Shown piece by piece: positions 1,840 to 62,150 of a stretch of 64,000 bases of DNA. A program made the position numbers and the translations under genes. The DNA lies in assembly GCF_006345805.1 (NCBI RefSeq), contig NC_042997.1, forward strand, positions 183,334,001 to 183,398,000, written 5' to 3'. Under the pieces are notes generated by a model, which was not told the origin of the DNA, made no database searches, and saw only the letters and a program-made list of their open reading frames with translations. This DNA is from Octopus sinensis. Lineage: Eukaryota. Each line of letters begins with the position of its first letter. The first letter of the stretch is position 1.

Positions 1840-3157
1840 ACACCCTGGGAGCTCCTTTATGCTCATGGCCTTGCTCTAATAGCTGAGTCAATACCAGAAC
1901 TAGAGAAGTTAAAGGTGTGGAAGCAAGGTCTAGAATCAAAGAGACTTTGAGTTAATCTAGCAAAAACCAAAGTTTTAGTAGGAAGGCAGACAAATCACAA
2001 ATCCCCTCAGTAGACGGCTCTGCTTGATCAGTAGAAAAGGCGTAGGTAGAAATTCCTTAAGGTGTATCCGGTGTAAGTTATGGACACATAAGAAGTGCAG
2101 CAATATGAAAGGAAGGTTAACTGGGAAGATAGTTTTTGGGCACAGGGGCAATAAACACTGAAAATGTACAGAAAACAGATTCCATCACATGCCAGGGAAA
2201 AAAACTAGAAGTAATTGATAGTTTCCTTTACCTAGGTGACTAAGTCAGCAGTAGGGGTAGATGCTCTGAGAGCTTAGCTGCTAGAATAAGAATAGGCTGG
2301 GCAAAGTTCAGAGAGCTCCTACCTCTGTTGGTAACAAAGGGCCACTCGTTCAGAGTGAAAGGTAGACTGTATGATGCCTGTGTGCGAACAGCCATGCTAC
2401 ATGGCAGTGAAACATGGGCTGTGACTGCTGAGGACATGTGTAGACTTGAAAGAAACGAAGCTAATATGCTCCATTGGATGTGTAATGTCAGTGTGCATAC
2501 ACGGCAGTTTGTAAGCACCCTGAGAGAAAAGTTGCACATAAGAAACATCAGATGTGGTGTGCAAGAGAGACCACTGTACTGGTATGATTATATAATGCGT
2601 ATGAATGAGGACAGCTGTGTGAAGAAGTGTCACACACTAACAGTGGAAGGAACCTGTGGAAGAGGTAGACATGGGATGAGGTTAACGTTGGGCCTCACAG
2701 AGGCAATGACAAGCGACTGAACTCTTTGGAGATATGCCGAGCTTGAGATCTGGCAAGCCAAGTGAGATTGTAGTCATGGCTGATAACAATGTCACATAGC
2801 TGACCTGTTTAAAAGCATCCTTCAATCCCTGAATGATATGGTGTGCTTGTGAAGGCCTGTTGAACCAAGTGAAATCATAGTCATGGCCGATGCCTGTGCT
2901 GCCTGACTGGCCCCCATGCTGGTGGCACATAAAAAGCACCATCCGAGCATGGTCAATGCCAGCGCCGTCTGACTGGCCCCGTGCTGGTGGCACCTAAAAA
3001 GCACCCACTACACTCTCAGAGTGGTTGGCATTAGGAAGGGCATCCAGCTGTAGAAACCTTGTCAAATTAGATTGCAGCCTGGTGCAGCCTCCAGTCAAAC
3101 CATCAGACCTGTGCTAGCATGGAAAGTGGACGTTAAACAATGATGAGGATGATGATA
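1840..3157 (+). mobile_element. RTE-clade LINE, 5'-truncated, degenerate RT plus 3' UTR
   Basis: PWELLYA.., KGRLYDACVRTAMLHGSETW; ends in CATGGAAAGTGGACGTTAAAC(GAT)n-type tail. Confidence 0.88.
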
Positions 3158-5441: not shown

Positions 5442-5569
5442 GTGGTTCGGCAAAAGAGACCGATAGAATAAGTACTAGGCTTACAAAGAATTAGTCCTGG
5501 GATCGATTTGCTCGACTAAAGGCGGCGCTCCAGCATGGCCACAGTCACATGACTGCAACAAAAGAGTAT

Positions 5570-6560
<991 letters not shown>

Positions 6561-7036
6561 ACACTCATGTATGTGTAAATATTAAATAACTTTCATATGA
6601 TCGTTTTAAAGAATGTGCGAAAAAAAAAAAGTATAAGTTTTCATAGCTAAATTTGTTTATTTAGAATCCACTCCATCCATCCATCCCCCACCTTCGTGCG
6701 AATTTAGACGAACTTTATATATTTGCACTTTAAGAGCTCTATTACTTTGTTTCCTTTTGTTACACGTCAGAGCTCGTCTCTTTTAAATGGTCGGTCCTCG
6801 GCTGTTAGTTTCAACAGAGTTATGCCCCTTCTTGAAATAATTTACCCTACCTTTCACTTCCATTACTAAACAATCAAACAAAATGGCGCAATAGTTCCAG
6901 ACTAGAGCTTTTCAGCATCTGCTTTTATTTTTGCCTAGCTCGTATATTTATAGACATTTGTATTAGTTTTTGTTCCACCAAATCCCAGCTACAGATAGCT
7001 ACATCAACAACATATATAGGTGCGGGGTTTCCTGCC

Positions 7037-7923
7037 ATGCCAAAGAAGAAAAAGAAAATGAGTTACGAAAGACGTCGAAGACAAGACAGAAGTCGCAAGA
7101 GATTATTTCGTGGTTCACAGTCTGATTTATCTCCAATGAACGGTAATCATGGTAATTATGTTTCAAAAGCTTATGCTATTAATGAATTTAATTTTGAGGA
7201 TTTGGATCGAATGATTATGTTTATTACGGAATCGAAACAAATTCAGGGTCGCTACTACGTTCGTTATCTTCCAGGCATGCTTAATTCCGCTGGAGAATTG
7301 ACTCCATGTAATTATAGACCCGTTTTCAGCTTTACTTCTACTGCTGCTTCATCTGATTATAACTTTATCCAAAATAATGATTACAGCGATGGTTCCCCTG
7401 AAGTTGTTGACCTAACTGACAGCGACGGTGTTTCGTCGGAAAACAGCAATCCTGCATCGCCAACTTCACCTTCAACTGTTGACGAAACTCAGAGAAACAT
7501 ATTGAAGTTGAAGGTTCAGAAAATGGTGAACCCGGTGAAAAAAAAGATTCGAAAAGTGAAACACCGGGAGCAGAAAAAGCGAACGTATCTAAATCGATAC
7601 CAGGGTTTTTATCAACGATAAACAGGAAACAAACCGCACGGAAAAGTATGCGGCAACAAACTGAATCTTTGTCTTGCGGAACTGAAAACAGTGCATCTCC
7701 GGCGATGGACATGGAAACGGAAAGTTCGTCCGTTTCTGCTTCTAATTCCGATTCAGTAAATACCAATAATAATATTCGAAGTAAAAGTACCAGTAGTTCT
7801 ATCAACAAAAATAACCTTGTAGCTAACTCCTCGCTAACTAGCAACTGTAAGACTAAGCTACCATCTGATAAGTGGGACATTTTGGATGGAATAACAGTGA
7901 CTATGAATCCGGATTTTCGATGA
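7037..7923 (+). CDS. Intronless ORF, ~295 aa if one frameshift near 7483-7546 is repaired; unknown nuclear-type low-complexity protein (NLS, SIM, H3-tail mimic)
   Basis: gccATG start; frame 2 open 7037-7621; frame 1 open 7483-7923. The acidic/Ser-rich composition before ~7485 continues in frame 1 (SEKHIEVEGSENGEPGEKKDSKSE...), not frame 2. No repeats inside; CpG-rich. No family recognised. Confidence 0.6.
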
Positions 7924-10900
7924 CCTAACGTTGTTCCCTCTTGTACAAAGAAAGAAAAAAAAAAAGATACAAAACAAAACAAAAAAAAAGACAAAAAAAA
8001 AATTTAATCATGTAAACTTTTACCAATTCGTAGCATATACATTAATTTCATGAATTCATTCATTCAAAGCGAATTTCTCGTTTCTACTCATGAATTTTCC
8101 AACATGGCTGCCTGATTGATAATTGATTACAGGTATCTATTGAATGGATTAGTCACTTTAACTGGAAATTAGTGAGTGTGCAAATTATATTCTAGTTTTG
8201 TTCGGCCAAATTTTTTGGTATCTATTGCTACATTAGGACTCCTGCACTGATGTCACGTGTTTCAGCAGCCATATTGAGACGATTTTAGCTGGCTGAACTA
8301 ATTTAGTCACAGGCACTGCTGCATTTAAAGTTCCGATTTTCATCTGATAATGTGTTCATTTTTATCCTCCTTCTCTATAAATATTGAAACAAAACAAAAC
8401 AAAAAAAAAACAAACAAACATTTTTTTTTTTTTCGAGAAATATCCTCAACATATATATATTTTATTTTCTATTGTAAAGAAAATGGGAAATGTTCCGAAG
8501 ATGAACCTAAATAATCTACATTTTTTGGACAGGATACTCTGAGTCGGCTAAACTTAAATGACAAAAGAAAAAAAAATTTATTCGAGAAAGGCGGGTTTAC
8601 TATGTTTATACATATGTATGTGTTTCATATATATTTATAGATATATAAAAACCTGTTGATGTTCCTTCAGCTTGTGTTCAAAACAAAAATGCTGTGTGTC
8701 TATTTACGTCTCACTTAGCTTTAATATTTCTTCTTTTTTCCTATTTGCTCCCCCCCTCTTCTCCCTCCCTTTCTCGTTTTAAAAGGTAATATTTAATTAA
8801 TCATTATTTAATACTTGGAAACCTTTACTCTAAGACTGTAAACCTTCTTGTGGTTATTGCTTTCACTTACTTTTAAGATCTGACTGATACTTTCAACAAA
8901 CAAACAATTTGAAAGGAAACAATTTTTTTATATATGAAAAATACATGTAGAAAAAGCAAGCCACTCAATTTCATAAAAGGTTCATAATCATATGACTGCC
9001 ATGCTGACTTGATTTATATTTTATTCAGTACCTTAAAATGTATATCATCTTGATAAACTTTTTTTGTCTCCCTTCTTTATAAAACTTCATTTTTTCTCTT
9101 CATTTCAAGTTAAAAAATAAATCTTAGTTGTGAGAATGTTGACCTTTTTGTACCTTTATTTAAAAAAAAAAATTAACGATTGAAAAATATTTTTAAAATG
9201 TGCTCTCAAGACTTCAATATTTACATACACAGACACACACAAAAAAATTACTGTTGGTGTTGTTTTAGTTGTAGAAAAACGTTTGAATAAGTATTTTGAG
9301 GAGATATTTACATTTGCAGAAAAATGAATGGCTAGTCGTATGTGCTTGACATAAGTGTTTATGGATTATATATACAGCATTAGATATATAGAACATTGAA
9401 GTTTTAAGTAAGTCGTATTTATGAATCATATCATAACGTCTTCTGGTGATATTATTTAATATACAAAATGGTTTAAAAGCAAGTGTTTATAATTTAAACT
9501 AAACTATTTTTAAAATACTGCTCCCAGATCTGGATTCATTGTTCTTTGTTTACATATTTTGGCTTTCATCAAATAGCTGTTATACGATCTTGTTTTATAT
9601 ATGCAATAGTTTATTTGTAACATTTTGACATATTTGTTCTGGAGAGTACAATACTTTGATTTCCAAATATATAGGATAGATACATTATTTAATGTTCGTT
9701 TGCATAGGAAGTGGGTTTTTTTTAAGGTTTTCACGATAACATTTTTTGATTCAATTTTTAAAAAATATTTGACAACAGTTGTGTTGGGAGTTGTGGATAT
9801 TAATTAATGGAATTGCCCGTGAACGAATTAAAATTTCTATTTTGTTGCAAATTAATTGCATTCAAGAAAGTTGTTGACGTTGCTTGGCGTATCAGAGATT
9901 TTTTCTTTCTAATAGCTTAACCACCGACATTGGTCTTTGTATTATATACAATCTGAATAAGTCTCTCTCTTTGCTCTAATTTTTTTCTTTTTCTTACAAA
10001 TTAAGGTTATATTTGTTGCATTTAAGTTGTTTTGCCATTAAAAACTGACTCGCTGATTTATAGCTAAACTAATAATTTTAATTGTTGGAGTGTCCCCGGT
10101 CAATTCTATTGTCAGCATGGAGGCTGCTGATTAAATAATCATTATTTTTTCAAGTCGTGGCTATCCCGTCTTGCGAAAGGAAGAACACTGCAATTGGGAC
10201 GTTCTTATTTAGCAACTATCGCAATAGCAACCGATCTGTTTCCCATTTATATCATTGTATACACTATTATTTTTTGTGCAGAAGCTTACTTATTGACAAC
10301 AACCTAGTTTCTTCAAGAAATCATGCTAATTTCATTGTATCGTTTTATTATATTCAAAAGAAAAAAATTATTACTTCGTCCTATGAAGAAAGGCATTGTT
10401 CATTATCGCCTGTACTGAAACGGGTTGGGCTGTCTGGACAAATTGAGTGCATTTAATTCTTCGACTGAGTTGAGTGTGGGAGGGCGGTGTGGCTACGGGA
10501 AAGATACTTGTTTGAGTAGGAGGAGGCGTATAAAATGCATGTTCAGTGGCAGTTGTAGGAAAAGCAGTAACGGTTTATAGTGGGAGGACAGCTCAACAAC
10601 TGGCTGGTGATAGCTTATTAGTTTCATATTGGCCCTGATCGAGCACACCTATGAGCTCTTTCAGTCGTGATCAGTGTGTCCTTTTTTTTTTTCCATCCAG
10701 GATCGCGTTATTTTAATGTGTTTCATGTGCTTTGTGGGCGGTATGGTAGCATTCAATGGAAATTTGTGGCTGTTCTTTCTAGCCGGTCGGCCGATCGTTG
10801 CCATGTCAAGTTTTTTTTTTTCTCCTTTGTCGTATTTCATTGACAGGTTGTTGGTAAAGTAATTCCAGTCGTGGAAACAATATTCGGTGTTGTATATTTT

Positions 10901-11696
10901 TAGTTCAGGAATGACGGAGATATTGGCTTTTGAACAGAGATCACTCGAAATACGTCCAAGCGATTTTGAGTGTAGTTAATAAAGCTAATTGTTTATTTTA
11001 TCATGACATAACAAGAAAGCTTAGCGCTTATGTCCGATTTGCGGGATCTTTTGCCTCTGGTAAACCAAAACACTGATGCAGTTACATTGCCAAATATATT
11101 TAAGGATTTTTACAGTTGCCCGCTAAGTTAGGTCTAGTAGTGTTGTAATAGTTAATCAGTTGTTATTACTTCTATTTAACTTGGATATGTTTGTGATTGT
11201 TTTGGAGTTTTGTCAGTTAGGTTTATTGAAATTTTAGATTGTCAATGGAAAAAAAAAAAAGAATTAAATATTAGATTAAAATAAATGTAAGCAGAAGAAA
11301 CCGTAGCTAATCGAGCTTCGATAGTAGAACCAAAACAGTAGCAGCTAGTGTGATAGTGGCCGAAGAATGCGTTTAACCAATTCTTTCAAGCCTACATAAT
11401 ATCTTTCTAAATATTAGCCGTCGTAGTTTGCGATAAGCAGTTGCTATTATTTACTTTATGAATTTAACATTGCAAAAACACGACAGATGCTTAACACTAT
11501 AGTGTTAAAATTTATATTATAAATACTTATACTAATGAGAAGTACTTTGTGTCAAAAACAGCAGAATTTTTCCTGATGAAATGTGTGTGTATGTATTTAT
11601 GTGTGCGTGTATATATATATATGCGTGCGTGTATATATATGTATATAATGTGCGTGTATAAATATGTATATAATGTCTGTTTATATATGTATATCA

Positions 11697-11804
11697 CGTG
11701 ACCGATCAGACCATCAGATGTTGCTACACATCGCTGGTCACAATGCGCTTCGCATTGTTTTAGCCTTCGCATGACGCCACCCCGCTGGCTAAGCGAGCAG
11801 GCCA
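11697..11804. repeat. GC-richer ~108-bp module embedded in TA/TG microsatellite (probable dispersed repeat)
   Basis: Abrupt composition change inside simple repeats; family not identified. Confidence 0.45.
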
Positions 11805-12126
11805 TATATGTATATAATGTCTGTTTATATATGTATATAATGTCTGTATATAATGTATGTATATAATGTCTGTGTGTATATATGTGTAATAATGTCTGTA
11901 TATATGTGTAATAATGTCTGTATATATATATATGTGTAATGTCTGTATATATATGTTTGAATAAATATATATATATATATGTATATAATGTGTATATGTA
12001 TATAAATGGAGATTATTGGTTGTAAAGGGTCTTCTGAAATAAGTTAATTCTAAGTGCTAAGTACAGCACATGTACATTCATTGCTGATGAAGTCATAATT
12101 TTGTAAAGTTAAATTAGATTTTTGAA

Positions 12127-19739: not shown

Positions 19740-20065
19740 TGTGATACCCATGCTGGTGGCACATAAAAAGCACCATCCAAATGTGGCCGATGTCAGCGCT
19801 ACCTTGGCTGGCTTATGTGCCAGTGCATGTAAAAAGCACCAACTGATCGTGGCCGTTGCCAGCCTCCCCTGGCACCTGTGCCGGCAGCACGTAAAAAGCA
19901 CCCACTACACTCACGGAGTGGTTGGCATTAGGAAGGGAATCCAGCTGTAGAAACACTGCCAGATCAGACTGGAGCCTGGTGCAGCCTCCTGGCTTCCCAG
20001 ACCCCGGTCGAACTGTCCAACCCATGCTAGCATGGAAAATGGACGTTAAATGATGATGATGATGT
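19740..20065 (+). mobile_element. RTE 3' UTR fragment with repeated TGGCAC(A/G)TAAAAAGCACC units
   Basis: Shared tail ending GGACGTTAAATGATGATGATGATG. Confidence 0.82.
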
Positions 20066-23311: not shown

Positions 23312-25270
23312 TACTGATCTGAATACCATGATTCCTTCAGCACTGGTGACTGACCAACCAATCAGCTGTGATCTGCTGTCTGAAGATGAGGTTCATACAG
23401 CAGTAAATTACTGGATCATTGGGAAGGCAGCCAGTGTTTGTGACATCCATAGGAAGATGATCAAGAAAGGTGGGCCTGCTGCAGTCATGTTTTTGCAGCA
23501 GATCTTCTGCTCAATCTGGAGCAGTGACATTATACTGCTGGACTGGAAGAGGAGTATAACTATCTCACTTTGGAAAGTTAAAGGTGACAACTACAACAAT
23601 TATAGGGCTGTTACACTCCTCTCAATGCCTGGTAAGGTCTTTGTCAGGGTCATCCTGTGAAATCATCTGCTTGCATCTCAGTAGCCGGAGCAGTCAGGGT
23701 TCGTGTCAAAGAGGTCAACTACTGACAGGGTCCTAGCTCTTTTTGTACTCATTGAATGCAAGCAGAGCTTTCAGAAGGAGCTACTTGCAACCTATGTTGA
23801 CCTCTGCAAGGCATTTGACTTGGTGGACAGGAATGTGATTCTAGAGCTCTAAGGTATACCTCCCCAGCTGATTGGGCTGATGATGGCCTTGTAGACTGGA
23901 ACAGTCAGTGCAGTTCAGATTGGGGGCTCAGCATCTGACATTTTCCCAGTTAGAGCTGGGGCCCATCAGAGTTGTGTCTTGGTTCCTGATCTGTTTAGTG
24001 ACTGCATAGATTGGATACTTGACTGAATGATAGCCCAACTGAGTTGTGGTGCACTCATTTGTGAAACTAGGATTACAAAACTAGATTTTGCTGATGTTGC
24101 AGTTATTCTTACTAAGTCTCTGGATGTCTTAAGGAGCACTCTCCTTTCACTGAGTAAGGAAGAGGAGCTAGTTGACTTTGGAGTCTCTTGGGTCAAGACA
24201 AAAATCCAGTCCTTCCTTGATATCTAGGAGGACTATGCCTCTTCTGTCTCTATTGTGGGTGAGAATGTTGAAATTGTTGATTGATTCATTTATCTCAGCA
24301 GTGAGGTTCATAATGGCATTAGCTGTAAGTCTGAAGTCCTAAAAAGACTGGGACAAACTCGTACAGTTGTGGACTCATTTGACCAAGGTGTTTGGCCCTG
24401 CTGATATCTGTGCAGGAGGATAAAGGTTCGGGTCTTTAAGTCTTTGGTCCTCCCTGTCCATCCATATAGTTGCAAGAATCGGACACTGTCCTGGGCCCTT
24501 AGGAGCCACTTGAACTCCTTTGGTACCAGAATGCTTCACAGAATTATGGGTTACCACTGGTTGGATCTCATATCGATCTGATTACTCTGCTCAGAAACTG
24601 GGATGCATTCTGTCACTTGTATGATTTGGGGATGCTGTCGCAGACTGTTTAGCAAAAATTGCTTGATTTTCCAAGTTAGACCTTGCTTTCTGTGTTCTCT
24701 TCACTGAAGATCCAGCTCAGTTGATGTCTCATGATGGTCAACCACATGCCACATGGTCATGGCAGATAAAGAGGTATCTTGTGGAAATGGGAACTGACTG
24801 GGACTCTACTCGACAGGTCATTAGGAGGACCCAGGAATATACCAACAAATGGCAAATGCAGTAACATACTGCAACAATGGCACATGCTTTTACACCTGAC
24901 CTGACCTCCAATCTTCTCCAGATTGATTATCATTATTGTTTAAAATTATCAAAACATTTTTTCATTATACCTAAATGACTACATCTGAAAAATGTTGGAT
25001 ATAAATGTCTTTATATCTTTTTCATTTTAATTGGGCAGTTTTCTTGGTAGTTTTCCTTTTTTTGTTAAGTTGCAATAGTCTGAAGTTGGTGTTAGGAAGA
25101 GCATCCAACCATAGAAACCATGCCAAAGCGGACACTGGAGCATGATGCAGTCTTTGGGACTCATTAGGTCCGGTCAAATTGTCAAATCCATGCTAGCATG
25201 GGACATGGATGTTAAATTATGACAATGCTGGTGATATTGCAAAGTACAGATAAAACAATATTTAAATTAA

Positions 25271-26633: not shown

Positions 26634-27309
26634 TGTTAAATCTAAACTCAGTTGATCCTTGACTCATTTCATTTTGTTTTGTTTTTACATAATATATTTA
26701 TCCAACCCATGATAGTAAGCCAGGTGTCTATCTTGTTATCTTTATCTCTTTTTTTTTTCAGTAAAGGATCACATCTTCAAAAAGTGATAATGGAGAAGCT
26801 CAAATGTAAACAAATGCACACACACATTTCATCATCATCATCATTATCATCATCAACATCAACATTTTAATGTCTGTTTTCCGTGCTGGCATGGGTTGGA
26901 TGGCTTGACAGGAACAAGCAAAACCAGATTTGCTATAGGGATTGGATATAGCCTCAGACCAACCAAAGCCTTGTGAGTGGATTTGGTAGGTGGCTACTGA
27001 AAGAAACCTTTTGTGTATGTGTGTGTGTGTTACTGTTTCCTTATCTTCACATCATGTGATGGTTGTAAGCAAGAGTCACCCTCATTGTTTGTAAGTGGTG
27101 CCTTTTGTTTCCAATTTTCTGTGAAAACATGTCTGGTAATGGGGAAATATTTCCTTACTTGGAAACATGTGAGGTTTGGTGACAGGAAGGGCATCTGACC
27201 ATAGAAAATCTGCCCCAACAAATTCCTATCTGACTTATGCAAGCATGGAAAAGTGGACACTAAATTGATGATGATGATTAGAATATTAAACCCCAGCCCA
27301 TCCAAAGTG

Positions 27310-32213: not shown

Positions 32214-32368
32214 TTAATAGATTGTTTTTTTTTCTTATATGAAAGTCTATGGTAGAACTTTTGTTTCTTTTCATTTCTACTGTTTTAATGTCCAACATTA
32301 TTAAAATTATATTTTTGATCAACAGAAGCAGTAAAATCTGTAAGAGATTTATATTTCAATTTTCCCAG

Positions 32369-32613
32369 CTCTTCAATAATGTCCGAGCTTATGATCCCGT
32401 CCTGGCAAGGTTACCTCATATGGAGAGAGAACTGTCACACCTCATGAACAATATTCAAATTGTGCGTCGACATAGAAAACATACAACCTTAATGGCTGAG
32501 CAATATGAAGAACTCTTGAACAAATTAATCAACTCACTTCGCAAATGCCAGTTAGAAGCCAGTTTATACTTCTTGAAAGAAGACCTTTCAGATTTTGAAT
32601 TAGTCTTGGAATG
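32369..32613 (+). CDS. TCAIM: TCAIM coding exon (LFNNVRAYDPVLARLPHMERELSHLMNNIQIV...FELVLE)
   Basis: ttttcccAG acceptor, GTTTGT donor; resembles human LFERLPSYFDLQRRLMILEDQISYLLGGIQVV; phases fit. Confidence 0.88.
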
Positions 32614-33189
32614 GTTTGTTGCTCACATATTCCTATCTTACCTTTTTTTGTCAAGAGATTTAGAATGTATTTCATTATTGTTTTATTGTTGTTGTTGTGA
32701 TGATGATGATGCTAGCACATGTTAATTTGACAGGTATTTTATTTTGAAGTTTGGTAAGAACAGGTCTCCTCAGCTCTCAAGAATCTGTCTTAGGATTCTT
32801 GCAGAATATACGATAGCATTTTTCTACAGGTCGACAATGCGAGTTTCAATTCCAATTTCTTTCAGTCTTTAGATAACATTTTGGGTGTTGTGCAAGCACA
32901 CCAATTACTACAGGAATAATTGTTGTCTTGTTCTTCCAAAGTCTCCTCAGCTTTCTGGCTAAATAAATACATACATACATGCATGCATACATACATACAT
33001 ACATACATATATACATATGTATGTACACACACACACACACTCAAACTCATATTATCATACATGTGAATATAGATGCAGGCATGGCTATGTGGTAGAAATT
33101 TTTCTTTTTGGCCATATGTTCAGTCCTTCTGTGTGGCACTTTGGGCTAGTGTCTTCAAGAACAGCTCCAGGCTGACCAAAACCTTGTGA

Positions 33190-50305: not shown

Positions 50306-51891
50306 GTTAGTTAGTTAGTTAGTTAATTTGGCTCAAAAGCAAATAGCAAGGCCATGTAGGGGGACATGGAGTTAAGTACAGGGTGGTGTTCATGTAAAGA
50401 GTTCAGGCCACTTGAGGTCCAGGGAGGCTTTGAACAAAGTGGTCATCGGCATCTTCACCATCTCGTCTGGCAGCTTGTTTCACGGATCCGCAACCCGGAC
50501 GGAGAAAGCTCCTCTCCTTCGATTGAGATGAAATCATCGCAGGTAGAGCTTTTCGGAATGACCCCGCAGCCGACGCTCTGGAGCAGGAGTGAAGAACAGC
50601 TCTTTCGAGAGGTTACACTTTCCGCTTATGATGTTGTGGGCGAGAATGAGATCACTACGGCGGCGGCGTTTTTCAAGAGAATAAAGGTCGAGCGTCCTCA
50701 GCCTTTCTTCGTAGGATAAATTTTTGAGACCATGAACCATGCGGGTAGCCAGCTTCTGGACTCTTTCGAGATGCTGTATGTCTTTGAGGAGATAAGGAGA
50801 AGAGGCTTGAATCCCATACTCCAATATGGGTCTCACCAGCGTGACATAGAGTGGTAGGAATATGGCTACTGTGAGCATTCCGAATGACTGTCGAATCAAG
50901 AACAGAATTCCGCGTGCTTTGTTGGCAGCATGGACGCACTGGGCCGAAGGCGAAAAGGAGGAATCCACCAAGATACCTAGGTCCTTTACCTGATCGGTCC
51001 TCTCCAGCAGCAGACGACCCGGCTCGAAATCAAGTTGAGTTGCAGGAGTAGAGCCGACAGGCAGATGACAGCACTTTGACACATTCAGACACAGGTCCCA
51101 ATCGTTAGACCACTTCCAAATTTGGTGGAGGCATCGACGAAGATCCTCTATATTACCGCGAGGAGCGACCAGTTTGATATCGTCGGCAAATAGAAGGGTG
51201 TGTTGCGTGAGGTCGTCGGGCAAGTCATTTATGAAGACTAAGAACAACAAGGGCCCAAGCACTGAACCTTGAGGCACGCCACTGCTCGCACTGGAGACGG
51301 ACCGCGAACCATTAACTTGGACTTGGAAGGAGCGATCTGAGAGGAAGGCACCAACCCATCGTACAATATCCGGATGGAAACTATATGCTTGAAGCTTGAC
51401 AAGTAATAGGCGGTGGTTTACCGAGTCAAAAGCTTTGGCAAAGTCCAGTAAAACGATGTCAACAGCATCACTATCATCGAGGATGCGCGTCACCAATTCT
51501 TCCATTACTAGTAAGTTGGTCAAGCATGATCTCTTCGGCACAAAGCCGTGTTGGGAATCGGAGATAGAGGCTGTGTTTAGGAGGTGGAGCATCATACTTT
51601 TCTTAAGGATGGTTTCGAACATCTTGCTGATTATTGATGTATGGGAAACCGGTCGGTAGTTAAGCGGGTCTTCGCGGCTCCCTTTCTTGAAAATTGGGCA
51701 GATTATCGCTGTTCTCCAGTCTGCAGGTATAACACCCATCGCCAATGACATTGAATAGTCGTGTTAAGGGCTCGCAGATGACCGGAGCCAACGCTTTGAT
51801 AACCCGTGGGTGTATGCCGTCAGGGCCGTGACCCTTGTTGACATCAAGGCCTTGAATAACACGTTTGACTTCGTCCCGCGTGATGACCAAT
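50306..51891 (-). mobile_element. CR1/L2-group LINE, 5'-truncated, GC-rich, RT almost intact
   Basis: 405-aa ORF with QHGF, LDFAKAFDSV, GVPQGSVLGPLLF, FADD; frameshift near 51752; TGA stops near the 3' end; (AACT)n tail; inserted in an RTE tail. Confidence 0.92.
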
Positions 51892-52207
51892 CGAAGCCAT
51901 CTGGTTCACCAGTCTTCAGTCAAATCGTCCAACCCATGCTAGCATGGAAATCGGACGTTAAACGATGATGATGAAATGTGAGATGCAGACAAATATACAA
52001 TCTAAATCTTAAGATTTACATCACACACATGCATAACAAAGAAAATAACATTACTAGACACTGAAAATATTACATATTCTCGATATAAAAGAAAAACACA
52101 AACTATACTGTGTTCTGAAGGCATGTGTAGCCGTGTTGGGTTGTGATATAAAAATATGTAATAGAACAAGTGCAATAAAGAATTAAAAACATCAGCCTTC
52201 AACTCAC

Positions 52208-55775: not shown

Positions 55776-57131
55776 CTGAAAAATAAAGTTATCAGTTAAT
55801 GCCATATGAGTTTGATGTTTTAAAATTATCATCTTAATGATTTTACATGTTTTTCTAATAGATTATAGAAATTTGGATATACACACAAACATAAGTTGGA
55901 ATGACACTAAGTTCAGAAATTAGACAGGTACATACATAAATCTATCATGTGCAAACAGGCATGATGTTGTTGTCATTGCCATCATTTAACATCCCCTTTC
56001 CACGCTGGCATGGGTTGGACAGTTTGACTGAAGACTGGTGAGCGAGAAGGCTGCACCAAGCTCAATCTGATCATTTGCAACATAAAAGCTCAGCTGCACT
56101 GCAGATGTGAACATCCTTTCCAAAATCAACAAGGAAAATATGAACAACTGCATTAAAATCTGCTGCTCCTCTACCTTGATCATAAATTCACATATCAATA
56201 ATTATTGGTGTATTTAGTTATGCTAATAAATGTTTGACAATCTGGAAGAGTTAGGATTGTCAGACAAAGAGACCAATTAATATGCAAAACTTTTAAGTTC
56301 CACATGTAACACCTGTTATCCAAATTTCAGAGATGGTTCTTTGTTAGAACCAGCTCCTTCCATGCAGAAAGGATTCTAATAAAAAAAGAAAAAAAAAAAA
56401 AATATATATTTGTATTTGCTTGATACTGACAATTCGTCTGTCACAAACCAATGCACTTGGAATAGAGATGGAGTGAACCATTAGCCCCTAAACAAACTCT
56501 GCTTTTATGTATTGAGTACTTTTTTCATTTATTTCTACACCCAAATACATACAAGACAAGAAGACAGAACAACAAAAATTCTGTAGAGAATTGGATAGAT
56601 TCATGCTCAGTATGCCACAGTGAATATAAAATAATGCTAAATGTTTGTTATACATGGAGTTTCATTCCTTGACAGTGAAACATAAGCTGACTGGTACACT
56701 GTACCCAACACCCCTAAACATTGTAATATCATGATTTCACCACCCTGGATGAGTACTTTTCTTTTTATTGACCCTGAAAGGATGAAAGGAAAAGCTGACT
56801 TTAGTGGGATTTGAACTGAAAGAGCAGAGACTTGGAACAAATACCACAGTGTTCTCTCCAACATCCTAATGACTGCCTTCTAAGATACAATATGGAGGCC
56901 AACAAATCATAGATTTCAAACCTGCCATAGTTACAGCATTGTCTATAGATAAAATAGGAACTGAATATTTAAATGTGCTAGACCTCTGACAAATGCCATA
57001 AGCATTATACCATCAAGCCGGAAATATCATGTAGCCTTCACCTGCCTATATGGAAACAAAAAATTGATAAAGAACAGCAGAAAGTCCATTTGTTTTACAA
57101 AAGAAAAAAAAAAAAAAAGAGAGAATTTTAC

Positions 57132-60479: not shown

Positions 60480-61530
60480 AGTTTAATGGAATGAATTCAG
60501 TGTAGTGATATAAGTTGGTAAAGATAGTATAAAACTAAAAATATTTAAAATACAGTCATTAGATTTGGATTTAAATTGAATATAAGATTGACTGAGGGAG
60601 AAGTTTAGGAAATGGAAGGAGGTGTTTGAAAGCAAGGGTTTAAAGGTAAACCTCAGGAAGACAAAGGTGATGGTGAGCAGGGTGGAAGAAGTGTTAGTAA
60701 GGTAGATCCATGTGGTGTGTGTGAGAGAGACGGGTAATGGCAAATGTGGTGTTGTGTATGAAATGTGAGAAATGGATTCATGGTAGATGTACGTAAATGA
60801 AGAAGGTGACCCAAAGAGATTTTATTTGTGGAAGATGTGAGAAAGAAGCTGGAGGGGTGGCGGAATCAGCGGAAATGCTACGTGATGAGATGGAAACGGC
60901 GAGGGTTTTGTTATTTGGTAGATAGGGTGGATGTAAGTGGTGGATTTGAAGCAGCTGTGACAACAAGAGCGAGACTTGGCTGGGTGAAGTTCAGGGAATG
61001 TGGAGTGTTATTATATGGGAAAAAGTTCTCCTTGAAGATGAAAGGAAGGGTTTATCGGAGTTGTGTGAGAGCTGCAATGATGTATGGGAGTGAGACATGG
61101 TGTCTGAGGGAAAGTGAAATGGCAATTTTGAGAAGGACCGAGAGAGCAATGGTGAGAGCAATGTGTGGTGTGAAACTATTGGATAAAAGGAGGGCTGAGG
61201 ACTTGATGGAGATGCTGGAGGAATCAGTGGAACAGTTAGCAAGGGCAAATGGAGTGCTGTGGTATGGACATGTGATGAGGAGGGATGAGAATCATGTTCT
61301 GAGGAAAGTGTTTGAGGTTAAAGTGAATGAACTGTGAAAGCAAGGTTGAAAAAAGAACACATGGAGGGAACAGGTGGAGGAGGAGATTGGGAGGATTGGC
61401 TTGAGGAGGGAGGATGCCCAAAACTGGGCGAGATGGTGTGAGAGCAGTTACCGTAAGAGTGAGGTAGATTTGGCCACCCCTGTTAACTGGGACAAACCCG
61501 GATTTAAAATATTGGAATTCATTCATTGAG
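60480..61530 (+). mobile_element. RTE LINE 3' fragment (second RTE family)
   Basis: GWVKFREC...KGRVYRSCVRAAMMYGSETW...WYGHVMRR. Confidence 0.85.
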
Positions 61531-61824: not shown

Positions 61825-62150
61825 CATCATCCTCATCATTTAACGTCCGCTTTCCATGCTAGCATGGGTTGGACGATTTGACTGAGGACTGGCGAACCAG
61901 ATGGCTATGCGAGGCTCCAGTCTAATCTGACAGAGTTTTTACAGCTGGATGCCCTTCCTAATGCCAACCATTCCAAGAATGTAGTGGGTGCTTTTATGTG
62001 CCACTGGCACAAGGGCCAGTCTGGCGGTACTGGTAACGACCACACTCGAAATGGTGTTTTTATGTGCCACCTGCACAGTAGTCAGTCCAGCAGCACTGGC
62101 AATGACCTCGCTCGAATGTTTTGTTCACGTGCCAGTAAGGCGATGTGAAC
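61825..62150 (-). mobile_element. RTE 3'-tail fragment
   Basis: Reverse complement of the shared tail. Confidence 0.8.

What the first reader, a model, noticed from the sequence alone, without database searches (positions are those of the whole stretch)
7037..7923. Intronless ~295-aa orphan gene split by a single frameshift
Seen: good Kozak ATG, no repeats. Frame 2 closes at 7621 while frame 1 is open 7483-7923. One extra A in GACGAAACTC would give ...VDENSEKHIEVEG..., an acidic run continuous with the upstream sequence, whereas the frame-2 ending looks like a typical Lys-rich off-frame tail. Inference: either an assembly indel hiding a real gene, a very young pseudogene, or a recoded locus. 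No family recognised.
Basis: partly seen in the sequence, partly recalled or inferred. Interest (0 to 1): 0.7.

Follow-up and report, generated by a model that had tools for sequence, protein, structure and literature searches.

The report
Conserved octopus gene, one-base frameshift
This is a real, conserved, single-exon cephalopod gene for a 295-residue disordered nuclear protein, and its reading frame in this assembly is broken by one missing base that is either a sequencing error or a very recent mutation.

Summary
Frame 2 is an ORF from 7037 to 7621 (194 aa). Frame 1 is open from 7483 to 7923.

An intact 295-aa orthologue exists in another octopus species (P0001, 96% identical, on 4.5-kb contigs colinear with window 6809-11484). 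A second exists in O. bimaculoides (UniProt A0A0L8HZE9, about 98% identical). The DNA alignment shows the window lacks one A of CAAGAG at 7490/7491.

Both halves are equally constrained: dN/dS is 0.127 upstream and 0.117 downstream, in frame 1. The lesion therefore covers at most about 13% of the divergence path. It is either a consensus error (my preference, about 0.55) or a very young or segregating null allele (about 0.35). Recoding is not supported.

The family has only three clusters among 1.84 billion representative proteins, and no Pfam or PDB match. It is mostly disordered. It carries invariant short motifs:
- a roughly 55-aa core;
- a VVDLT SUMO-interaction-like motif;
- KQTARKSMR, identical to histone H3 residues 4-10;
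- a C-terminal KW..LDGITVT.NPDF.

The truncated product would lose the last two motifs. Function as a histone-H3K9 mimic adaptor is inferred, not shown.

The parts
6809..7036 (+). 5' untranslated region. It is colinear with the 5' end of orthologous contigs L001-L005 and contains a conserved 3-codon uORF at 6883-6894.
   Evidence: The blastn and MAFFT alignments start at window 6809 in all contigs and are 95% identical.
7037..7489 (+). CDS part 1 (frame 2), codons 1-151. It carries the basic N-terminus (KKKKK, RRRRQDRSRKR). The second ATG at 7058 is the start conserved in the distant homologues.
   Evidence: dN/dS against L001 is 0.127.
7160..7333 (+). Conserved core block, residues 42-99 (VSKAYA..EDLDRMIMFITESKQIQGRYYVRYLPGM.N..GELTPCNYRP.FSF). 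It is the only region with a predicted fold, a beta-hairpin at residues 59-82.
   Evidence: The block is invariant across three clusters that are otherwise 35-54% identical, with many synonymous codon changes. AlphaFold2 pLDDT here is 65-71, against a mean of 43 for the whole protein.
7403..7426 (+). VVDLTDSD: a hydrophobic core followed by an acidic/Ser run, resembling a SUMO-interaction motif.
   Evidence: VVDLT is invariant in all homologues, with synonymous codon changes. Assignment as a SIM is by resemblance to the RNF4 and PIAS motifs, from my own knowledge, and was not tested.
7490..7491 (+). Site of the 1-nt deletion. The window has C-A-G-A-G where the orthologue has CAA GAG (Gln152 Glu153).
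   Evidence: DNA alignment with L001. This is the only indel in the 888-nt CDS, against 68 indel events in 3.8 kb of flanking non-coding sequence.
7492..7621 (+). Off-frame Lys-rich tail of the 194-aa product (frame 2: RNILKLKVQKMVNPVKKKIRKVKHREQKKRTYLNRYQGFYQR*).
   Evidence: No homologue carries this sequence.
7492..7923 (+). CDS part 2 (frame 1), codons 153-295 plus the stop codon.
   Evidence: dN/dS against L001 is 0.117, and 11 of the 16 differences are synonymous.
7538..7545 (+). A8 run, read as A_AAA_AAG in frame 2, 45 nt downstream of the lesion. It is the only place where a -1 slip could restore the frame.
   Evidence: L001 has GAGAAAAAA at this position. There is no downstream structure, z = +0.65.
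7627..7653 (+). KQTARKSMR. The first seven residues are identical to histone H3 residues 4-10. The motif starts just after the frame-2 stop codon.
   Evidence: The motif is invariant in all homologues, with synonymous changes at six of its nine codons. It resembles the methylated ATF7IP site FKARKTMR (PMC6172828).
7870..7920 (+). Conserved C-terminal motif KWDILDGITVTMNPDFR.
7924..11484 (+). 3' untranslated region, colinear with L001. It includes the A-rich tract at 7947-8002.

Best explanation
The locus is a functional, single-exon, cephalopod-restricted gene. It encodes a 295-residue, largely disordered, probably nuclear protein built from short conserved motifs. The break in its reading frame is one missing A at 7490/7491. 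I think this break is not an evolved property of the species. Most likely it is a residual consensus (assembly or polishing) error, so the real gene reads straight through as ...VDETQEKHIEVEG.... Shown here: the gene, its conservation, the exact lesion, and equal purifying selection on both halves. Inferred: that the lesion is an artefact rather than a real allele, and what the protein does. My proposal for function is a chromatin adaptor that binds SUMO through VVDLT, presents an H3K9-like KQTARKS lysine to H3K9 methyltransferases and chromodomain readers, and carries a conserved C-terminal docking motif.
For: Intact orthologues exist: P0001 (295 aa, 96% identical), O. bimaculoides A0A0L8HZE9 (about 98% identical over the shared 295 aa) and P0005. 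The single-base gap is the only indel in the CDS, whereas about 16 would be expected at the flanking non-coding rate. dN/dS is 0.127 upstream and 0.117 downstream, with dS about 0.12. A Poisson bound says the downstream half can have evolved neutrally for at most about 13% of the window-to-L001 path, which is about 0.017 in dS units. Against the O. bimaculoides and P0001 proteins, the window lineage has only four conservative substitutions, one upstream of the lesion and three downstream. The downstream motifs KQTARKSMR and KW..LDGIT.T.NPDF are intact in frame 1 and are invariant across homologues despite synonymous turnover. My own rough estimate is that, in a long-read assembly, a residual 1-bp error in 888 bp is several times more likely than a loss-of-function allele in a gene with omega about 0.12.
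Against: No reads or transcripts from the window's own species could be reached. Neither the 194-aa product nor an intact same-species protein is in the collection. The deletion sits in an AA dinucleotide, not a long homopolymer. Across 4.7 kb, the window shows no excess of 1-bp deletions relative to the short-read contig L001 (6 against 13), so there is no local sign of systematic indel error. If the assembly is short-read based, the prior reverses in favour of a real allele.
Confidence: 0.55

Rival explanations
1. The deletion is real. It is a very young loss-of-function allele, either heterozygous or segregating in the sequenced individual or recently fixed in this species. It produces a 194-aa protein that keeps the core block and VVDLT but lacks the H3-like motif and the C-terminal motif. 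This would be an incipient unitary pseudogene.
For: The sequence as given carries the lesion. One-base deletions in short A runs are the commonest natural indel (my own knowledge). There is no local evidence of systematic assembly indel error. The age bound still allows a lesion up to about 0.017 in dS units old, which covers polymorphism-level ages.
Against: The gene is strongly constrained in both halves, with omega about 0.12. The lost motifs are the most conserved features of the C-terminal half. There is no second lesion downstream. The prior for a null allele in such a gene is low.
Confidence: 0.35
2. The deletion is real and the full-length protein is still made by recoding. A -1 ribosomal or transcriptional slip on the A8 run (A_AAA_AAG, 7538-7546) would return to frame 1 after a 16-17-residue out-of-frame patch in a poorly conserved acidic segment.
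For: The A8 run lies 45 nt downstream of the lesion, in the register required for a -1 slip. In L001 the run is interrupted (GAGAAAAAA), so the longer run is specific to one of the two lineages. The replaced segment is not conserved in the family.
Against: There is no stimulatory structure downstream: MFE is -9.7 kcal/mol and z = +0.65 against shuffles. All orthologues are in frame, so this is not a conserved recoding signal. Eight A's is short for efficient slippage in eukaryotes (my own knowledge). The lesion site itself has no slippery sequence.
Confidence: 0.03
3. The ORFs are not a host gene at all. They would be a transposon ORF, a decayed processed retrocopy, or a chance or antisense artefact; the 209-aa ORF on the minus strand at 7365-7994 would be the alternative reading.
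For: The gene is intronless, an A-rich tract follows the stop codon (7947-8002), the surroundings are repeat-rich, and a long antisense ORF exists.
Against: There is a single copy in the window. No transposon domain was found. No flanking terminal or direct repeats were found other than microsatellites. No multi-exon parent or any other paralogue appears in 1.84 billion representatives. The A-rich tract lies inside the colinear contig and is shorter in L001. 20 of the 31 substitutions fall at third positions of the plus-strand frames, and omega is 0.12. The antisense open stretch is shorter in L001, 175 codons.
Confidence: 0.03

Closest known systems
Octopus bimaculoides uncharacterised protein A0A0L8HZE9 (P0004), together with Logan transcript clusters P0001/P0005, P0002 and P0003
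   Same: These are orthologues and homologues. They share the core block, VVDLT, KQTARKSMR and the C-terminal motif, and P0004 is about 98% identical over 295 aa.
   Different: All of them are in frame, whereas the window has the 1-nt deletion. The first 46 residues of the UniProt model come from a SINE-like repeat and are a gene-model artefact.
ATF7IP/MCAF1 (and ATF7IP2): SETDB1 cofactor with an H3K9-like lysine (K16, FKARKTMR) methylated by G9a/GLP and read by the MPP8 chromodomain
   Same: Both have an ARK(S/T)MR H3K9-like motif in a disordered region (PMC6172828). ATF7IP also has a SUMO-interaction motif of the (V/I)(V/I)DLT type, which I state from my own knowledge.
   Different: No sequence homology was detected, and neither the ATF7IP_BD nor the C-terminal FNIII domain is present. 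The motif order is different, and the protein is 295 aa against more than 1200 aa. This is an analogy of mechanism, not family membership.
G9a automethylation site and other H3K9 mimics bound by HP1 chromodomains
   Same: Both are ARK-type histone-tail mimics in a non-histone protein (PMC2175347, listed).
   Different: Here the identity to H3 extends over seven residues (KQTARKS). The protein has no SET domain or any other catalytic domain.
SUMO-interaction motifs of RNF4 and PIAS proteins
   Same: Both show a VVDLT/VIDLT hydrophobic core followed by acidic/Ser residues (my own knowledge).
   Different: There is no RING or SP-RING domain, and SUMO binding was not tested.

Membership tests
Cephalopod P0001/P0002/P0003 family (UniProt A0A0L8HZE9) | Conserved core block DLDR.IMFITESKQIQGRYYVRYLPGM...GELTPCNYRP.FSF | tested here: met
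   The window's frame 2 encodes it unchanged.
Cephalopod P0001/P0002/P0003 family (UniProt A0A0L8HZE9) | VVDLT, KQTARKSMR and the C-terminal KW..LDGIT.T.NPDF motif | tested here: met
   All three are present. The last two are present only in frame 1, downstream of the lesion.
Cephalopod P0001/P0002/P0003 family (UniProt A0A0L8HZE9) | One uninterrupted ORF of 288-370 aa | tested here: not met
   A 1-nt deletion at 7490/7491 splits the ORF.
Programmed -1 ribosomal frameshift / recoded gene | The two-frame arrangement is conserved in orthologues | tested here: not met
   P0001, P0004, P0005, P0002 and P0003 are all single ORFs.
Programmed -1 ribosomal frameshift / recoded gene | A slippery heptamer in the overlap, followed by a stimulatory structure | tested here: not met
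   A_AAA_AAG is present at 7540-7546, but the downstream 94 nt fold no better than shuffles, z = +0.65.
Unitary pseudogene | A disabling lesion | tested here: met
   Met in the sequence as given. Whether the lesion is real in the organism cannot be tested here.
Unitary pseudogene | Relaxed constraint or further lesions downstream | tested here: not met
   Omega is 0.117 downstream against 0.127 upstream. A neutral phase is limited to about 13% of the path at most.
Unitary pseudogene | Loss of expression in this species | not testable with these tools
   No same-species reads or contigs are in the collection.
Processed retrocopy | Intronless copy with a poly(A) remnant, target-site duplications and a spliced parent gene | tested here: not met
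   It is intronless. However, no flanking direct repeats were found. The A-rich tract is internal to the colinear contig. No other homologue was found in 1.84 billion representatives.
Transposon ORF | A transposon protein domain, multiple copies and terminal repeats | tested here: not met
   There is no Pfam hit, a single locus in the window, and no terminal repeats.
ATF7IP/MCAF | SETDB1-binding domain and C-terminal FNIII domain | tested here: not met
   The Pfam scan at E up to 10 found neither domain, and the profile found no PDB relative.
ATF7IP/MCAF | An H3K9-like ARK(S/T)MR lysine that is methylated and read by a chromodomain | tested here: inconclusive
   The motif is present and invariant. 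Methylation and binding cannot be tested here.
Histone H3 | Histone fold | tested here: not met
   There is no Pfam histone hit, and the AlphaFold2 model is disordered. Identity is limited to seven residues.

The most novel reading that the evidence does not exclude
The gene family is a cephalopod-specific chromatin adaptor. It would carry a perfect internal copy of histone H3 residues 4-10 (KQTARKS) as a methyl-lysine mimic or pseudosubstrate, coupled to a SUMO-interaction motif and a C-terminal docking motif. In this reading the window's species, or the sequenced individual, carries a genuine very recent truncating allele that removes exactly the mimic and the C-terminal motif, giving a natural separation-of-function variant.
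Probability: 0.12. Interest if true: 0.55.

Novelty: new member of a known kind. Interest (0 to 1): 0.3.

Why it matters
For genome annotation, this is a real gene that an automatic pipeline would truncate, mark as low quality or drop. The O. bimaculoides model of the same gene also carries a spurious repeat-derived N-terminus.

Biologically, the frameshift itself is ordinary. The family is of modest interest. It is a lineage-restricted, intronless, disordered protein in which selection preserves only a few short motifs. One of those motifs is a seven-residue copy of the H3K9 region, next to a SUMO-interaction-like motif. This is the same motif logic as in vertebrate heterochromatin cofactors such as ATF7IP. 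If confirmed, it would be an independent invention of histone mimicry in cephalopods.

Tried and rejected
- **Pfam.** A scan of both halves at E up to 10 gave only a sub-threshold UBR4-like hit on the low-complexity tail (13.8 bits against a cutoff of 27). I rejected it.
- **PDB.** A profile search gave only low-complexity matches with E of 0.9 or more. Rejected.
- **Profile searches.** Searches of 1.84 billion representatives and of the 5.8-billion set found nothing beyond P0001-P0003.
- **Core-block search.** A search with the core block alone returned nothing, not even P0001. I treat it as a failure of the word index and as uninformative.
- **AlphaFold2.** With a 3-sequence alignment it gave mean pLDDT 43. 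I did not run a fold search because it would be meaningless on such a model.
- **Exact look-ups.** The 194-aa truncated product and the O. bimaculoides model are not on record, so no same-species or O. bimaculoides DNA was obtainable.
- **Run accessions.** A literature search for the accessions, meant to name the source species, found no papers.
- **Homopolymer collapse.** I looked for an excess of 1-bp deletions in the window relative to L001 and found none.
- **Frameshift-stimulating structure.** None was found after the A8 run.
- **Retrocopy or transposon structure.** A search for terminal or direct repeats found only microsatellites.

Full report
**1. Observation**

The window contains an ATG-initiated frame-2 ORF at 7037-7621 (194 aa). 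It also contains a frame-1 stretch free of stops from 7483 to the TGA at 7921-7923. Given the local composition (34% A, 27% T), stops are expected at 0.068 per codon. Open stretches of 147 and 194 codons then have probabilities of about 3e-5 and 1e-6. The frame-2 open stretch 6836-7621 is the longest on the plus strand of the whole 64-kb window. There are no tandem repeats within the CDS.

**2. An intact orthologue exists and the lesion is located exactly**

I searched with the joined translation and found three protein clusters.
- P0001 is 295 aa, 96% identical, and covers 100% of the query.
- P0002 (370 aa) and P0003 (362 aa) are distant homologues.
- The P0001 cluster also holds the Octopus bimaculoides UniProt entry A0A0L8HZE9 (P0004, about 98% identical over the shared 295 aa) and P0005.

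P0001 is encoded on 4.5-kb Logan contigs from five sequencing runs (four carrying P0001, one carrying P0005), all with the same 5' end (L001-L005). These contigs align colinearly with window 6809-11484. The flanking regions are about 90% identical with many indels, so the contigs come from another species.

The DNA alignment shows GAC GAA ACT CAA GAG AAA CAT in L001 against GACGAAACTC-AGAGAAACAT in the window. The window therefore lacks one A at 7490/7491. The intact reading is ...VDETQEKHIEVEG....

**3. Both halves are under the same purifying selection**

I computed Nei-Gojobori estimates for the window against L001.

| Region | dN/dS | Synonymous changes | Non-synonymous changes |
|---|---|---|---|
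| Whole CDS (dS 0.12) | 0.122 | 21 | 10 |
| Upstream of the lesion | 0.127 | 10 | 5 |
| Downstream, read in frame 1 | 0.117 | 11 | 5 |

- 20 of the 31 substitutions fall at third codon positions. This also shows that the plus strand, not the 209-aa antisense ORF at 7365-7994, is the coding strand.
- The single-base gap is the only indel in the CDS. The flanking UTR-like sequence carries 68 indel events in 3.8 kb, so about 16 would be expected in the CDS if it were neutral.
- A Poisson bound shows the downstream half can have evolved neutrally for at most about 13% of the total path between the two species, about 0.017 in dS units.
- Polarising amino-acid changes with O. bimaculoides and P0001 gives four conservative changes on the window lineage (A143T, T156I, V188I, S273T) and two on the O. 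bimaculoides lineage. There is no visible acceleration.

The lesion is therefore either not real or very young.

**4. Artefact or real allele?**

This cannot be settled with the tools. The collection holds neither the 194-aa product nor any intact protein from the window's own species. The O. bimaculoides gene is not on record as DNA.

Two points argue against a systematic assembly problem. The window has no excess of 1-bp deletions relative to the short-read contig (6 against 13). The deletion is also in an AA dinucleotide rather than a long homopolymer.

The case for an artefact rests on prior odds, which are my own estimate. A residual 1-bp error in 888 bp of a long-read assembly is several times more likely than a null allele in a gene with omega of 0.12. 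I put about 0.55 on an artefact and about 0.35 on a real young or segregating null allele.

**5. Recoding**

All orthologues and distant homologues are single ORFs, and the lesion site has no slippery sequence. An A8 run (A_AAA_AAG in frame 2, 7538-7546) lies 45 nt downstream. In principle it could restore the frame by a -1 slip after a 16-17-residue patch in a non-conserved acidic segment. L001 has GAGAAAAAA at this position. The downstream 94 nt fold no better than shuffles (z = +0.65). I give recoding about 0.03.

**6. Not a transposon or retrocopy**

- The gene is a single locus in the window.
- It has no Pfam domain.
- It has no flanking terminal or direct repeats other than microsatellites.
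- No paralogue or parent gene was found anywhere.
- The A-rich tract after the stop codon (7947-8002) lies inside the colinear contig and is shorter in L001.

**7. What the protein is**

The family is lineage-restricted. An HMM of the three clusters, searched against 1.84 billion representative proteins without a word index, recovered only those three clusters. The same held in the 5.8-billion set. There are no Pfam or PDB relatives. AlphaFold2 predicts disorder (mean pLDDT 43), apart from a beta-hairpin at residues 59-82 (pLDDT 65-71).

Conservation is concentrated in short blocks. These are invariant between proteins that are otherwise 35-54% identical, and their codons differ synonymously. 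Selection therefore acts on the peptide, not on the DNA.
- A basic N-terminus (RRRQ..RKR), NLS-like.
- The core block VSKAYA..EDLDR.IMFITESKQIQGRYYVRYLPGM.N..GELTPCNYRP.FSF (7160-7333).
- VVDLT followed by acidic/Ser residues (7403-7426). This is the pattern of the SUMO-interaction motifs of RNF4 and PIAS (my own knowledge).
- KQTARKSMR (7627-7653), whose first seven residues equal histone H3 residues 4-10.
- The C-terminal KW..LDGIT.T.NPDF (7870-7920).

The H3-like motif closely resembles the ATF7IP K16 site FKARKTMR. That site is trimethylated by G9a/GLP and read by the MPP8 chromodomain (PMC6172828). It also resembles the G9a automethylation site that binds HP1 (PMC2175347, listed).

From this I infer a SUMO-binding chromatin adaptor whose K203 acts as an H3K9 mimic, either as a substrate and reader ligand or as a pseudosubstrate. 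This rests on motifs only. Nothing about binding or methylation is shown. The family is not a member of the ATF7IP family: neither ATF7IP domain is present, and the motif order differs.

The 194-aa product stops at 7619-7621, two codons before the H3-like motif. It would retain the core block and VVDLT but lose the mimic and the C-terminal motif.

**8. Gene structure**

The 5' ends of the contigs coincide at window 6809 in five runs. The two distant homologue clusters are likewise carried on contigs of fixed length and gene offset, shown for four contigs each. This is the behaviour of transcripts, so I infer that the gene is expressed in the related species and is unspliced over about 4.7 kb.

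The distant homologues start at the methionine that aligns with the second ATG (7058), so MPKKKKK may be an octopus-specific extension.

The 62-residue N-terminal extension of the O. bimaculoides UniProt model is not supported. Its first 46 residues match a SINE-like repeat present 20 or more times in the window, mostly with stop codons. L001 has an in-frame TAG 48 nt upstream of the ATG.

**9. Verdict**

This is a real, conserved, lineage-restricted gene with a single 1-nt frame break that is either an artefact or very recent. As a frameshift it is ordinary. The motif content of the family is the more interesting part.

Noticed in passing
window 19959-20060, 51913-51972, 61829-61888, 25167-25235, 26868-26912, 55963-56034 and at least 14 further sites: A short interspersed repeat whose translation reads ..PVK.SNPC*HGK.TLNDDD.. 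occurs 20 or more times on both strands. The N-terminal extension of the O. bimaculoides UniProt model A0A0L8HZE9 (residues 1-46) matches this repeat, so that part of the public gene model is probably an artefact.
   Followed up: partly
window 5880-6550 (also 5567-5658, 11585-11991, 35.7-36.2 kb): There is a very long (TA)n microsatellite of about 345 copies only about 260 nt upstream of the gene's apparent 5' end. Further TA/TG-rich arrays lie just past the 3' end of the colinear region.
   Followed up: no
window 50534-51751 (-): A 405-aa ORF carries a reverse-transcriptase domain (RVT_1, E = 3.9e-32), so it is a LINE-type retrotransposon fragment. ORFs at 2328-2720 (+) and 60828-61337 (+) share a ..GSETW.. 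motif with each other and look like other retroelement remnants, though they have no Pfam hit.
   Followed up: partly
window 32249-32725 (+): A 158-aa ORF matches Pfam DUF4461 (E = 1.7e-13, above the gathering score). It is probably an exon of a conserved host gene about 21 kb downstream of the apparent 3' end (11484) of the gene studied here.
   Followed up: no
window 6883-6894: A three-codon upstream ORF (ATG GCG CAA TAG) sits in the 5'UTR and is identical in the orthologous contig L001. The whole 5'UTR is 95% identical, more conserved than synonymous sites in the CDS.
   Followed up: no
window 7365-7994 (-): A 209-aa TTG-initiated antisense ORF overlaps the CDS. It is 175 codons in L001, and the third-position substitution pattern supports the plus strand, so it is probably a by-product of the sense codon usage.
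   Followed up: partly
window 7538-7545: An A8 run inside the CDS is created by a synonymous GAA, where L001 has GAG. It is a likely hotspot for indel errors or slippage, yet the actual lesion is not here.
   Followed up: yes
tool behaviour: A word-indexed search with the 67-column core-block alignment returned no hits, not even P0001-P0003, which contain the block exactly. Negative results from short queries with that tool should not be trusted.
   Followed up: no
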